Assembly (NCBI RefSeq): GCF_006345805.1
Contig: NW_021829353.1
Span: 1 to 6,526 of the forward strand
Length of the DNA: 6,526 bases
Direction of reading: 5' to 3'
Origin: Octopus sinensis
Taxonomy: Eukaryota
Shown here: positions 3,504-4,582 of the stretch, in pieces
Position numbering within the stretch: the stretch's first letter is position 1
Layout: the number at the start of each line of letters is the position of its first letter
Made by a program: the position numbers and the translations under genes
Notes under the pieces: generated by a model
Databases searched by the model: none
Told to the model about the DNA's origin: nothing
The model's input: the letters and a program-made list of their open reading frames with translations, nothing else

Positions 3504-3659
3504 AAAGACATTGTATTTGAAAGTAAAATATTGTTTCCAAATTTTGGCACAAGGCCAGCAATTTCGGGGGTTGATTACAGTGCTCAACTGGCACTTATAT
3601 AATCGACCCCCGAAAGAACGAAAAGTCAAGTCAACCTCTACGGAAATTGAACCCAGAAT
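3504..3659 (-). repeat. Left arm of a long inverted repeat (5'-truncated family-1 SINE body, short tail and unique flank)
   Basis: Its reverse complement aligns to 4410-4582 with 9 substitutions (all transitions) and one 17-nt indel, by hand alignment. Confidence 0.92.
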
Positions 3660-3687
3660 AATAATTGATAATATTTTACTTTCAAAT

Positions 3688-3902
3688 AAGGCGGTGAGTT
3701 GGCAGAATAGTTACCGCCCCGGTCAAAATGTTTAGCGGCATTTCGACCGTCTTTACGCTCTGATTTCAAGTTACGCCGGGGTCGACTTTGCCTTTCTTCA
3801 TTTCAGGATCGATAAAATAAGACCCTGTAGTGCACTGCGGTTGATGTAATCGACTTATCTGCTCTCCTGAGCTTGCTTCGTTCTGTCAAATTTGAAACCA
3901 AA
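3688..3902 (+). mobile_element. Family-1 tRNA-derived SINE, old diverged full-length copy (unit A)
   Basis: Ungapped alignment to the copy at 3980-4142 with about 37 mismatches in about 163 nt (~77%, hand count). Ends TTTGAAACCAAA. Confidence 0.85.
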
Positions 3903-3917
3903 ATTTTACTTTCAAAT

Positions 3918-3978
3918 GGGGCGACAAGCGAGCAAAATTATTATCACGCCGGCCAAAATACTTAGCGGTATTTCGTCC
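3918..3978 (+). mobile_element. Family-1 SINE head of old copy B, interrupted at GGTATTTCGTCC
   Basis: GGGGCGACAAGCGAGCAAAATTATTATCACGCCGGCCAAAATACTTAGCGGTATTTCGTCC aligns with the heads of units A and C. Confidence 0.75.
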
Positions 3979-4204
3979 AGCGAGCTGGCAGAAACGTTAG
4001 CACGCCGGGCGAAATGCTTAGCGGTATTTCGTCTGCCGTTACGTTCTGAGTTCAAATTCCGCCGAGGTCGACTTTGCTTTTCATCCTTTCGGGGTCGATT
4101 AAATGAGTACCAGTTACGCACTGGGGTCGATATAATTGACTTAATACGTTTGTCTGTTCTTGTTTGTCCCCTCTGTGTTAGCCCCTTGGGGTAGTAAAGA
4201 AATA
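3979..4204 (+). mobile_element. Family-1 SINE, younger long-tail copy (unit C)
   Basis: Clear A box (TGGCAGAAACG) and B box (GAGTTCAAATTCC), body with GTCGAC/GGGGTCGAT motifs, tail ending GTAGTAAAGAAATA. Confidence 0.9.
3986..4060 (+). promoter_or_regulatory. Pol III internal promoter (A box 3986-3996, B box 4048-4060) of SINE unit C
   Basis: Match to TRGCNNARYNG and GWTCRANNC-type consensus. Confidence 0.65.
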
Positions 4205-4389
4205 GGTATTTGTCTGCCGTCGTTCGAGTTCAAAGTGCAAATTCCGCCGAGGTCGACTTTGCCTTTCATCCTTTCGAGGTCGATTAAATAAGTACTAGTT
4301 ATGCATGGGTACGATATAATCGACTTAATCCGTTGTCTGTCCTTGTTTGTCGTCTCTGTGTTTAGCTCCTTGTGGGTAGTAAAGAAATA
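4205..4389 (+). mobile_element. Family-1 SINE, headless long-tail copy (unit D), tandem to 4023-4204
   Basis: Aligns end to end with 4023-4204, with several small indels including a GTGCAAA insertion. Starts exactly at the GGTATTT(C)GTC motif. Confidence 0.88.
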
Positions 4390-4556
4390 GGTGTTTCGTC
4401 CGACTTTACATTCTAGGTTCAATTTCCGTAGAGGTTGACTTGACTTTTCATTCTTTCGGGGGTCGATTATATAAGTGTCAGCTGAATACTGTAATCAACT
4501 GAGCCTCCCCACCAACCCCTGAAATTGCTGGCCTTGTGCTAAAACTTGGAAACAAT
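4390..4556 (+). mobile_element. Family-1 SINE body and short tail, the probable continuation of old copy B
   Basis: Resumes at GGTGTTTCGTCC, the motif at which the B head stops. Ends GAAATTGCTGGCCTTGTGCTAAAACTTGGAAACAAT. Confidence 0.8.
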
Positions 4557-4582
4557 ATTTTACTTTCAAATACAATGTCTTT
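4410..4582 (+). repeat. Right arm of the long inverted repeat
   Basis: See 3504-3659. The arms share diagnostic variants (TTCCGTAGAGGTTGACTTGACTTTT, loss of GGGGTCGAT before GTAATC) and the non-SINE flank ACAATGTCTTT. Confidence 0.92.

What the first reader, a model, noticed from the sequence alone, without database searches (positions are those of the whole stretch)
3504..4582. 156/173-bp inverted repeat (~94%) bracketing the whole SINE array: foldback element, TIR pair or dsRNA stem
Seen: 3504-3659 is the reverse complement of 4410-4582, with 9 transitions and one 17-nt indel (TGAGCCTCCCCACCAAC, bounded by CAAC microhomology). The arms share private SINE mutations and the non-SINE flank ATATTTTACTTTCAAATACAATGTCTTT, so they come from one copy rather than two independent insertions. 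Spacer is 750 bp. Inference: either an inverted duplication by replication template switching, or TIRs of a non-autonomous foldback/MITE-like element that recruited a SINE fragment (outer ends TTAAAGACATTG...CAATGTCTTTGA). Established: inverted SINE pairs in pre-mRNA form ADAR substrates and promote back-splicing, and coleoid cephalopods have extensive A-to-I editing, so this stem would be a strong editing or circRNA candidate if transcribed.
Basis: partly seen in the sequence, partly recalled or inferred. Interest (0 to 1): 0.7.

Follow-up and report, generated by a model that had tools for sequence, protein, structure and literature searches.

The report
Local inverted duplication beside a SINE insertion
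A 156-bp piece of a SINE repeat plus its unique flank has been copied backwards 750 bp upstream, probably as a by-product of another SINE's insertion; it is not a transposon end, and such hairpin-forming repeat pairs are common in this genome.

Summary
Window 3504-3659 is the reverse complement of 4410-4582: 147/156 matches, nine differences that are all transitions, one 17-nt gap, and a 750-nt spacer. Both arms descend from one copy. They are 94% alike, while no other genomic copy of that SINE exceeds 77%. They also share about 22 nt of non-SINE flank. The right arm is the parent: it is the last unit of a multi-unit SINE array and runs on into unique flank. The left arm is a fragment carrying a derived 17-nt deletion.

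The TIR/MITE reading is refuted. The terminal 30-mer, allowing three mismatches, occurs only twice in the 2.72-Gb genome, and both sites are the arms. There is no flanking target-site duplication.

That SINE has no target-site duplication of its own, and its age is similar to that of the duplication. My best model (confidence 0.5) is snap-back fill-in of the other broken end during that SINE's target-primed integration, as described for human L1.

The dsRNA stem forms in silico on either strand. Transcription and editing could not be tested. Comparable inverted pairs occur about once per 40 kb in sampled loci, so interest is low to moderate.

The parts
4410..4582 (+). Right arm, the parent copy: the last ~150 nt of the terminal unit (E) of a multi-unit SINE plus ~22 nt of unique 3' flank. 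The homology may run on to 4585.
   Evidence: alignment. (SINE consensus ends ...GAAACCAATATT at about 4559). It is contiguous with the rest of unit E (4391-4409) and with flank that is unique in the genome.
3504..3659 (-). Left arm, the derived inverted copy: a 5'-truncated SINE unit E plus flank, reading in SINE sense on the minus strand and lacking 17 nt. It may extend to 3501.
   Evidence: Unrelated sequence lies on both sides. The family consensus contains the 17-nt segment, so this arm carries a deletion.
4500..4516 (+). 17-nt segment TGAGCCTCCCCACCAAC, present only in the right arm. It is bounded by CAAC microhomology and deleted in the left arm.
4560..4582 (+). Non-SINE flank shared by both arms (TTACTTTCAAATACAATGTCTTT). 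Its first 12 nt are the repeated target motif.
   Evidence: other copies diverge after AATATT; the junction 30-mer is unique to the two arms.
3077..3501 (-). Full-length young SINE of a second family ('fam-2'). Its head GGCGTAGGAGTGGCTG... starts at 3501, its tail ...AAGTAAAAGAGTAAAAG ends at about 3077, and it has an internal (TA)n(CA)n microsatellite. The head abuts the outer end of the left arm.
   Evidence: more than 4000 candidate copies; the best are ~93% identical and start at query 39-41, i.e. window 3502-3500; alignment; 3.8% from consensus.
3067..3076 (+). Candidate left target-site duplication (CATACGTGAT) of the composite [fam-2 SINE + left arm].
   Evidence: with re-indexing: 7/10 identical to 3660-3669 at exactly the abutting positions. 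This is weak evidence.
3660..3669 (+). Candidate right target-site duplication (AATAATTGAT), immediately inside the left arm. This is the inferred 'reciprocal' end of the break.
3660..4409 (+). Spacer. It holds the AT-rich target remnant (3660-3675), a 12-bp motif, SINE A (3688-3905), a 12-bp motif, a SINE head fragment B (3918-3978), ~184-bp units C (3979-4205) and D (4206-4390), and the first 19 nt of unit E.
   Evidence: families D14-D20; consensus; 12-mers; unit junction.
3676..3687 (+). First direct copy of the 12-bp motif TTACTTTCAAAT. The other direct copies are at 3906-3917 and 4560-4571, and an inverted copy lies inside the left arm at 3515-3526. I read them as nested target-site duplications.
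   Evidence: 4 exact copies against 0.09 expected.

Best explanation
This is a local, DNA-level inverted duplication, not a mobile element. About 173-176 bp was copied in reverse orientation 750 bp upstream. The copied piece is the last ~150 bp of the terminal unit of a multi-unit SINE plus ~22-25 bp of its unique downstream flank. The copy lies exactly between the 5' head of a full-length SINE of a different, younger family (3077-3501, minus strand) and the AT-rich sequence that was probably that SINE's target site.

Most likely sequence of events (inferred):
1. The partner LINE's endonuclease nicked the top strand at about ...TGAT|AATATT, and reverse transcription of the SINE RNA extended that end (3077 to 3501).
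2. The other ('reciprocal') end of the break, at about 3657-3660, was resected, leaving a 3' overhang of the minus strand.
3. The overhang's tip folded back and annealed by 0-3 nt (AAT/ATT) next to position 4410 on the same strand.
4. It primed about 176 nt of fill-in synthesis (4410 to 4585), possibly error-prone, which would account for the 17-nt slippage deletion.
5. It was then ligated to the end of the SINE cDNA with 1-2 nt of overlap.

Since then both arms have decayed neutrally, by about 3% each. The only present-day property is that a transcript crossing both arms, on either strand, could form a ~156-bp imperfect duplex.

Shown: the repeat, its single-copy origin, which arm is the parent, the unique termini, the abutment to the SINE head, and the fold. 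Inferred: the coupling to the SINE integration and the snap-back steps.
For: - Single parent copy: the arms are 94% identical, against no more than 77% for the other genomic copies scored that span the SINE part. They share flank beyond the SINE's 3' end, and the junction 30-mer occurs only in the two arms.
- The right arm is the parent. It is continuous with unit E, the array and unique flank. The left arm is a fragment with a derived deletion.
- Coupling to the fam-2 SINE: the homology ends within 0-3 nt of the full-length SINE head and does not resume beyond the SINE.
- Target-site duplications: the fam-2 SINE alone has none (best match 4 nt), whereas several sister copies show 7-13-nt duplications. 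The composite 3077-3659 is flanked at the exactly abutting positions by CATACGTGAT / AATAATTGAT, a 7/10 match. For scale, random 9-mer pairs drawn from the window reach 7/9 or better with P about 0.002.
- Similar ages: the fam-2 copy is 3.8% from its consensus (12/318). The arms differ by 5.8-6.3%, or about 3% per lineage, and the derived states are split between them.
- Geometry fits the model. The inner end of the copy (3659) corresponds to the template point nearest the break (4410), and the outer end corresponds to the far point. This is what snap-back priming of the reciprocal end predicts.
- Precedent: L1 insertions with inverted duplications of nearby genomic DNA on the reciprocal end, with about 2-bp microhomology and a duplication between the primary and reciprocal breakpoints, are reported from experimental clones and tumours (bioRxiv 10.1101/2024.12.14.628481, read).
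Against: - The candidate target-site duplication has 3 mismatches in 10, more than about 3% decay predicts, and about a third of sister SINE copies also lack a clear one. The duplication argument is therefore weak.
- Microhomology at the inner junction cannot be established. It is anywhere from 0 to 3 nt, depending on where the break lay within (AAT)3.
- The age comparison has wide error (10 and 12 substitutions), and the fam-2 consensus was built from the best hits only.
- The loop implied (750 nt now, 520 nt if SINE A came later) is larger than the 'small hairpins' described for the L1 inverted duplications.
- There is no orthologous or allelic empty site. The region occurs once in the assembly, on an unplaced 6.5-kb contig.
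- The precedent is mammalian L1. Nothing is known here about the LINE partner of this SINE.
Confidence: 0.5

Rival explanations
1. An inverted duplication made by replication-based template switching (FoSTeS/MMBIR type), unrelated to retrotransposition. The fam-2 SINE inserted later at, or trimmed, the outer edge of the left arm.
For: The arms derive from one copy. The junctions show little or no homology, as expected for microhomology-mediated switches. The region is dense in SINEs and microsatellites, which favour fork stalling. SINE insertions are very frequent in this genome.
Against: It requires a coincidence: a full-length SINE head landing within about 2 nt of the end of homology, with no trace of the arm beyond the SINE. 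It also requires a SINE without its own target-site duplication at that spot.
Confidence: 0.25
2. An RNA-templated chimera. After finishing the fam-2 SINE RNA, the reverse transcriptase jumped to a second RNA, a plus-strand transcript running through SINE unit E into its flank. It copied the last ~176 nt of that RNA, giving a bipartite retrocopy [5'-truncated E+flank]-[fam-2].
For: Both parts are directly joined in the same transcriptional orientation on the minus strand, and the junction is at the exact 5' end of the first template. The upstream part is 5'-truncated, as retrocopies often are. Template-switch chimeras made by LINE reverse transcriptases are documented, and they are directly joined, same-sense and flanked by short direct repeats (PMC2104539).
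Against: Two defining features of those chimeras fail here. The 5' part should be a full-length RNA and the 3' part 5'-truncated; here it is the reverse. The supposed RNA would have to read through two TTTT runs (within 4440-4450 and at 4557-4560) and end at a TTT, which makes a Pol III origin unlikely. No source locus exists other than one 750 bp away, a proximity that a DNA snap-back explains by necessity and an RNA jump does not.
Confidence: 0.12
3. An assembly artefact on a small unplaced contig: a chimeric or foldback join.
For: The window is an entire 6,526-bp unplaced contig in a fragmented, microsatellite-rich region. Its first 985 nt overlap the end of another unplaced contig. The repeat region is represented only once in the assembly. 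No reads were available.
Against: Missed-adapter or foldback chimeras are palindromic about a centre. Here a 750-nt non-palindromic spacer separates arms that differ by 9 substitutions and a 17-nt indel. The left arm is joined cleanly to a full-length SINE head.
Confidence: 0.05
4. Two independent insertions of the same SINE in opposite orientation (the usual origin of inverted SINE pairs), perhaps later homogenised by gene conversion.
For: The arms do belong to an abundant SINE family, and inverted SINE pairs are common in this genome.
Against: The arms are 94% alike against no more than 77% for the other scored copies that span the SINE part. They share about 22 nt of non-SINE flank, and the SINE/flank junction 30-mer containing it is unique in the genome. 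The left arm has no 5' part.
Confidence: 0.02
5. Terminal inverted repeats of a non-autonomous foldback or MITE-like DNA transposon that recruited a SINE fragment.
For: An inverted repeat brackets a non-coding interior.
Against: The terminal 30-mer, allowing up to 3 mismatches, occurs only at the two arms in 2.72 Gb. No target-site duplication flanks 3501-3504 / 4582-4585. The outer left boundary is a SINE head, and the right arm is simply the end of a SINE array.
Confidence: 0.01

Closest known systems
L1 insertion-associated inverted duplications from remodelling of TPRT-generated break ends (bioRxiv 10.1101/2024.12.14.628481)
   Same: A retroelement insertion is directly joined to an inverted copy of genomic DNA taken from close to the integration site on the reciprocal side. 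The junctions have little or no homology. A possible short duplication lies between the primary and reciprocal breakpoints. The copy's orientation is the one predicted by snap-back priming.
   Different: Here the element is a SINE in a probable octopus germline, fixed and about 3% decayed, not a somatic or experimental human L1. The implied loop is hundreds of nt rather than a 'small hairpin'. The target-site duplication is only 7/10. The link is inferred from one locus.
Inverted Alu/SINE pairs as ADAR hyper-editing and back-splicing substrates (e.g. Porath et al. 2017, PMC5625713)
   Same: Two inverted copies of SINE sequence lie less than 1 kb apart and fold into a long, nearly perfect duplex in silico. 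According to that paper, octopus has an exceptionally high density of such structures.
   Different: The usual pairs are independent insertions. Here one arm is a segmental copy of the other, including non-SINE flank. Neither transcription nor editing was tested here.
Template-switch chimeric retrocopies (U6/L1, MINE; PMC2104539)
   Same: Two retro-sequences are directly fused in the same orientation, with the junction at the end of a template.
   Different: The pattern of full-length versus truncated parts is the reverse of the defining one. The upstream part contains non-transcribed-looking flank from a locus 750 bp away.
Foldback / MITE elements with long TIRs
   Same: Long inverted termini around a non-coding interior.
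   Different: The termini are single-copy, there is no target-site duplication, and the arms are a SINE fragment plus flank. This is not a family.

Membership tests
MITE / foldback DNA transposon | Terminal inverted repeats | tested here: met
   156/173-nt inverted repeat, 94%.
MITE / foldback DNA transposon | Multiple genomic copies sharing the same termini | tested here: not met
   The 30-mer terminus, allowing up to 3 mismatches, gives 2 hits in 2.72 Gb, and both are the arms themselves. The flank 4561-4676 is unique.
MITE / foldback DNA transposon | Target-site duplication directly flanking the outer ends | tested here: not met
   On the left outside is ...CTCCTACGCC (a SINE head); on the right outside is GAGTAAAATC. 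No direct repeat is present.
Inverted pair of independent SINE insertions | Both arms belong to one SINE family, in opposite orientation | tested here: met
   Both arms align to the same family consensus.
Inverted pair of independent SINE insertions | Homology confined to the SINE, with the arms no closer to each other than to other family members | tested here: not met
   94% between the arms against no more than 77% for the other scored copies spanning the SINE part. The homology runs about 22-25 nt past the SINE 3' end.
TPRT-coupled inverted duplication (L1-type break-end remodelling) | A retroelement insertion directly abutting the inverted genomic segment, with its 3' tail at the primary RT end | tested here: met
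   The full-length fam-2 SINE has its tail at about 3077 and its head at 3501. The arm starts at 3502-3504.
TPRT-coupled inverted duplication (L1-type break-end remodelling) | The template lies near the integration site on the reciprocal side, and the orientation matches snap-back of the 3' overhang | tested here: met
   The template 4410-4585 lies 750-925 nt to the right of the inferred reciprocal end (3660). The inner end of the copy corresponds to the proximal template end. The strand logic is my inference.
TPRT-coupled inverted duplication (L1-type break-end remodelling) | Short microhomology at the inversion junction | tested here: inconclusive
   0-3 nt (AAT at 3657-3659 against ATT at 4410-4412), depending on where the break lay in (AAT)3.
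TPRT-coupled inverted duplication (L1-type break-end remodelling) | A target-site duplication flanking the composite rather than the retroelement alone | tested here: inconclusive
   The composite is flanked by a 7/10 match (3067-3076 / 3660-3669). The SINE alone has none.
TPRT-coupled inverted duplication (L1-type break-end remodelling) | Insertion and duplication of the same age, or absent together at an empty site | tested here: inconclusive
   3.8% against about 3% per lineage, with wide error. No empty site is available in the assembly, and no related genomes were reachable.
RT template-switch chimeric retrocopy | Parts directly joined in the same transcriptional orientation | tested here: met
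   Both parts are sense on the minus strand and are joined at the SINE head. The criterion is taken from PMC2104539.
RT template-switch chimeric retrocopy | The 5' part is a full-length cellular RNA and the 3' part is 5'-truncated | tested here: not met
   The 5' part is a 5'-truncated SINE unit plus genomic flank. The 3' part (fam-2) is full length.
ADAR / circRNA-promoting inverted repeat | A long, nearly perfect intramolecular duplex | tested here: met
   The MFE and centroid folds of 3490-4600 on either strand pair the arms. The perfect runs are 37, 34, 27, 19 and 15 bp. The 9 mismatches become 4-5 G·U and 4-5 A·C.
ADAR / circRNA-promoting inverted repeat | Both arms in one transcript, with A-to-G clusters or back-splice reads | not testable with these tools
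   No RNA-seq access. The contig has no credible ORF or gene.

The most novel reading that the evidence does not exclude
SINE integration in cephalopods can itself manufacture long inverted repeats, and so potential ADAR substrates, by snap-back duplication of nearby DNA at the 5' junction. This locus would then be a germline-fixed, non-mammalian example of the TPRT break-end remodelling so far documented for human L1 in cell clones and tumours. If frequent, it would contribute to the unusually high density of dsRNA-forming loci reported for octopus.
Probability: 0.4. Interest if true: 0.45.

Novelty: new member of a known kind. Interest (0 to 1): 0.27.

Why it matters
Taken alone, this is one more hairpin-forming repeat pair in a genome that has very many. 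I found about one pair of at least 80 bp and at least 90% identity per 40 kb in 210 kb of sampled loci. Porath et al. 2017 report an exceptional abundance of such structures in octopus.

Two things are useful. First, it is a cleanly resolved case in which an apparent transposon 'TIR' is shown not to be one. Second, the exact fusion of the duplicated arm to a full-length SINE head gives a concrete, searchable signature: a retroelement 5' junction followed by an inverted copy of DNA from within about 1 kb on the other side of the target. That signature could be surveyed genome-wide to ask whether retrotransposition-coupled inverted duplication operates in invertebrate germlines and adds to editing substrates.

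Tried and rejected
- I looked for homology continuing beyond the fam-2 SINE or inside the spacer. There is none apart from a CA repeat, so the repeat was not a longer one split by a simple insertion.
- I looked for an allelic, paralogous or empty-site copy of the locus using three flanks (4561-4900, 2815-3076, 880-1500). These returned only old dispersed repeats, plus an overlap of window 1-985 with the end of contig C4744, which does not reach the repeat.
- I polarised the arm differences against the SINE family to look for a one-sided A>G (edited-RNA) or C>T signature. The changes are spread over both arms and are of mixed type.
- CpG decay does not explain the transition-only pattern. Only 1-2 of the 9 sites are in CpG context.
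- Rfam and ARAGORN were run to name the SINE heads. There are no tRNA hits. The only hits are sub-threshold 'miRNA' matches on microsatellites, which I take to be low-complexity artefacts.
- Literature searches using SINE sequence strings found nothing. I did not assign the two SINE families to published octopus SINE names.
- Twin priming was considered and rejected. It inverts a different, more 5' part of the same RNA and does not duplicate 150 nt plus genomic flank.
- A hairpin-capped foldback of a chromosome break was considered and rejected. It would duplicate everything distal to the break, not a bounded 176 nt.
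Full report
**1. The observation.**
The window is an entire unplaced contig (C5824, 6,526 bp) of a 2.72-Gb assembly with 13,516 contigs and about 30 chromosome-sized scaffolds. That size equals the one quoted for the PacBio/Hi-C Octopus sinensis assembly (PMC12564688). 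This is a size match only; I did not establish the organism with tools.

The repeat finder recovers the inverted pair in two pieces, 3570-3659/4410-4499 at 93% and 3501-3573/4513-4585 at 95%. A gapped alignment joins them. With one 17-nt gap, 3504-3659 matches the reverse complement of 4410-4582 at 147 of 156 positions. There are nine mismatches, all transitions. The extra segment TGAGCCTCCCCACCAAC lies at 4500-4516, bounded by CAAC. The spacer is 750 nt.

**2. One copy or two?**
The best-scoring other copies of this SINE in the genome (40 scored of 1799 candidates) match the right arm at 71-81%, and at no more than 77% for those that span most of the SINE part. Nearly all stop at about position 147-153 of 176. 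An alignment of 28 copies shows the family consensus ending ...GAAATTGCTGGCCTTGTGCCAAAATTTGAAACCAATATT, after which the loci diverge.

The arms are 94% alike and continue for about 22-25 nt beyond that end (TTACTTTCAAATACAATGTCTTT). The 30-mer spanning the SINE/flank junction, allowing up to three mismatches, occurs exactly twice in 2.72 Gb, and both occurrences are the arms. The arms are therefore duplicates of a single insertion, not independent insertions.

There is also no target-site duplication outside the pair.

**3. Which arm is the parent?**
The right arm is continuous with the rest of its SINE unit (4391-4409), with the upstream units of the array, and with downstream sequence that is unique in the genome. 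The left arm is an isolated fragment with unrelated sequence on both sides. It lacks 17 nt that the family consensus possesses. So the right arm is the parent and the left arm is the copy.

Polarised against the family consensus, about 4-5 substitutions are derived in the right arm and 3-4 in the left, and they are of mixed type. This looks like ordinary decay after the duplication, at about 3% per arm.

The all-transition pattern is nominally unusual. The transition fraction measured on neighbouring SINE copies is 0.64, giving P of about 0.02. Only 1-2 sites are in CpG context. I have no explanation beyond chance and post-hoc selection.

**4. The surroundings.**
The spacer is built of SINE sequence:
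- a complete copy A (3688-3905);
- a head fragment B (3918-3978);
- units C (3979-4205), D (4206-4390) and E (4391-4559).

The C/D and D/E junctions (AAAGAAATAG|GTATTT...) are not special to this locus. GTAGTAAAGAAATAGGTATTTCGTC, allowing up to three mismatches, occurs about 78,000 times in the genome, often in runs with a 182-185-bp period. C-D-E is therefore an ordinary multi-unit member of a very large family.

The 12-mer TTACTTTCAAAT occurs four times in the window, against 0.09 expected. Three copies are direct: before A, between A and B, and after E. One is inverted, inside the left arm. The direct copies look like nested target-site duplications from two SINE insertions into the same 12-bp target. 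The inverted copy shows that the duplication post-dates the array.

**5. The feature that changes the interpretation.**
Immediately outside the left arm lies a full-length SINE of a second, young and very abundant family, which I call fam-2. It has more than 4,000 candidate copies, and the best are about 93% identical. It sits on the minus strand, with its tail (...AAGTAAAAGAGTAAAAG) at about 3077 and its head (GGCGTAGGAGTGGCTG...) beginning at 3501. The inverted-repeat homology ends within 0-3 nt of that head and does not resume on the far side of the SINE.

On the minus strand both pieces are in sense orientation: 5'-[truncated unit E + flank]-[complete fam-2]-3'.

The fam-2 copy has no target-site duplication of its own, whereas several sister copies show clear 7-13-nt ones. 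The composite 3077-3659 is flanked, at exactly the abutting positions, by CATACGTGAT and AATAATTGAT, a 7/10 match. That is suggestive but weak.

The fam-2 copy is 3.8% from its consensus, similar to the roughly 3% per arm of the repeat.

**6. Mechanism.**
A recent study of induced and tumour L1 insertions describes insertions accompanied by inverted duplications of nearby genomic DNA. It explains them as follows: the 'reciprocal' break end is resected, its 3' overhang self-anneals at a microhomology, fill-in synthesis follows, and the end is ligated to the reverse-transcribed end (10.1101/2024.12.14.628481).

Mapping that model onto this locus gives the observed arrangement, including the strand logic. 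The primary end is the top strand at about 3076, extended by the SINE cDNA to 3501. The reciprocal end is at about 3657-3660. Its minus-strand overhang, folded back next to 4410, would be extended with the sequence of 4410 to 4585. On the plus strand this reads as the left arm, with 3659 facing 4410 and 3501-3504 facing 4582-4585. The joint to the cDNA has 1-2 nt of possible overlap, and the inner joint 0-3 nt.

I therefore favour a retrotransposition-coupled origin, at confidence 0.5. The coupling rests on one locus, a weak target-site duplication and an imprecise age match.

**7. Rivals.**
- Replication template switching followed by an unrelated SINE insertion at the boundary remains possible (0.25). 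It needs a positional coincidence.
- An RT jump onto a read-through RNA of unit E would also give collinear sense parts (0.12). It fails two defining features of template-switch chimeras (PMC2104539). It needs a transcript through two TTTT runs, and it does not explain why the donor lies only 750 bp away.
- An assembly artefact cannot be excluded without reads (0.05). A non-palindromic 750-nt spacer, nine substitutions and an indel are not what foldback chimeras look like.
- Independent insertions (0.02) and TIRs (0.01) are contradicted by the data.

**8. Function.**
As RNA, either strand of 3490-4600 folds with the arms paired in both the MFE and centroid structures. The stem has perfect runs of 37, 34, 27, 19 and 15 bp, 4-5 G·U and 4-5 A·C positions, and a 17-nt bulge. 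This is the kind of structure that ADARs hyper-edit. Inverted repeat pairs are the main substrates across Metazoa, and octopus is reported to be exceptionally rich in them (PMC5625713).

Whether this locus is transcribed is unknown. The contig has no credible ORF, its genomic position is unknown, and no RNA data were available.

In 210 kb of other loci fetched from the same genome I found five inverted pairs of at least 80 bp and at least 90% identity within 3 kb. The sample is biased towards SINE-bearing loci. As a dsRNA candidate this pair is therefore ordinary.

**9. Verdict.**
- The added finding is the exact fusion to a SINE head. It makes this a probable germline example, outside mammals, of a known retrotransposition-associated rearrangement.
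- Novelty: new member of a known kind.
- Interest: low to moderate.

Noticed in passing
window 3676-3687, 3906-3917, 4560-4571 (+) and 3515-3526 (-): The 12-mer TTACTTTCAAAT occurs 4 times exactly, against 0.09 expected. The three direct copies each follow a SINE 3' tail (AA[T/A]ATT) and bracket SINE A and the B-E array. This looks like nested target-site duplications from repeated insertion into one 12-bp target. The fam-2 SINE's inferred target lies only about 16 nt away, which would make this an insertion hotspot.
   Followed up: partly
window 4191-4215 and 4376-4400; genome-wide (e.g. G000:C1:12139142-12140267, C1:15416804-15417755): The unit junction GTAGTAAAGAAATAG|GTATTTCGTC occurs about 78,000 times in the genome (up to 3 mismatches), often in tandem runs with a 182-185-bp period. 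This SINE family carries a variable number of ~184-bp internal units, or has spawned satellite-like arrays.
   Followed up: partly
window 1-985 and G000:C4744:7910-8890 (L075): The first 985 nt of the window overlap the last ~980 nt of another unplaced contig at 92.7% overall and 98% outside microsatellites. The two contigs are either neighbours split at microsatellites or haplotypic variants. The overlap does not reach the inverted repeat.
   Followed up: partly
window 3504-3659 / 4410-4582: All 9 arm differences (10 with 3503/4583) are transitions. P is about 0.02 given a transition fraction of 0.64 measured on neighbouring SINE copies. Only 1-2 are in CpG context, and the changes are split between the arms. 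This is unexplained.
   Followed up: partly
window 3207-3340 (inside the fam-2 SINE): The fam-2 SINE carries an internal (TA)n(TG/CA)n microsatellite that is much expanded here (about 70 nt of CA) compared with most sister copies. This copy also lacks 17 nt of the consensus (CCCGTAACTTAGCGGTT region).
   Followed up: no
window 6380-6526: By eye this is a second, partial and diverged copy of the 3' part of the fam-2-type SINE (similar to 3110-3245), running into the contig end.
   Followed up: no
window 300-850, 1520-1625, 5136-5214: Rfam 'miRNA' matches (mir-3149, mir-297, mir-1277, mir-466 and others) all lie on TA/TG/ATGT microsatellites and all score below gathering thresholds. I take them to be low-complexity artefacts, not miRNA genes.
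   Followed up: yes
window 4677-4810, 1010-1380 and 1407-1500: Three further old dispersed repeat families, 70-90% identical to dozens of loci. They were not identified. Together with microsatellites and SINEs they leave almost no unique sequence in the contig.
   Followed up: no
L062 (G000:C8739) about 45 nt upstream of the fam-2 head: At another locus a fam-2 SINE head is directly preceded by the 5' part of the other SINE family in the same orientation (...GGTATTTTGTCCATCTTTATGTTCGA|GGCGCAGGAG). This could be an insertion into a SINE or another junction rearrangement.
   Followed up: no
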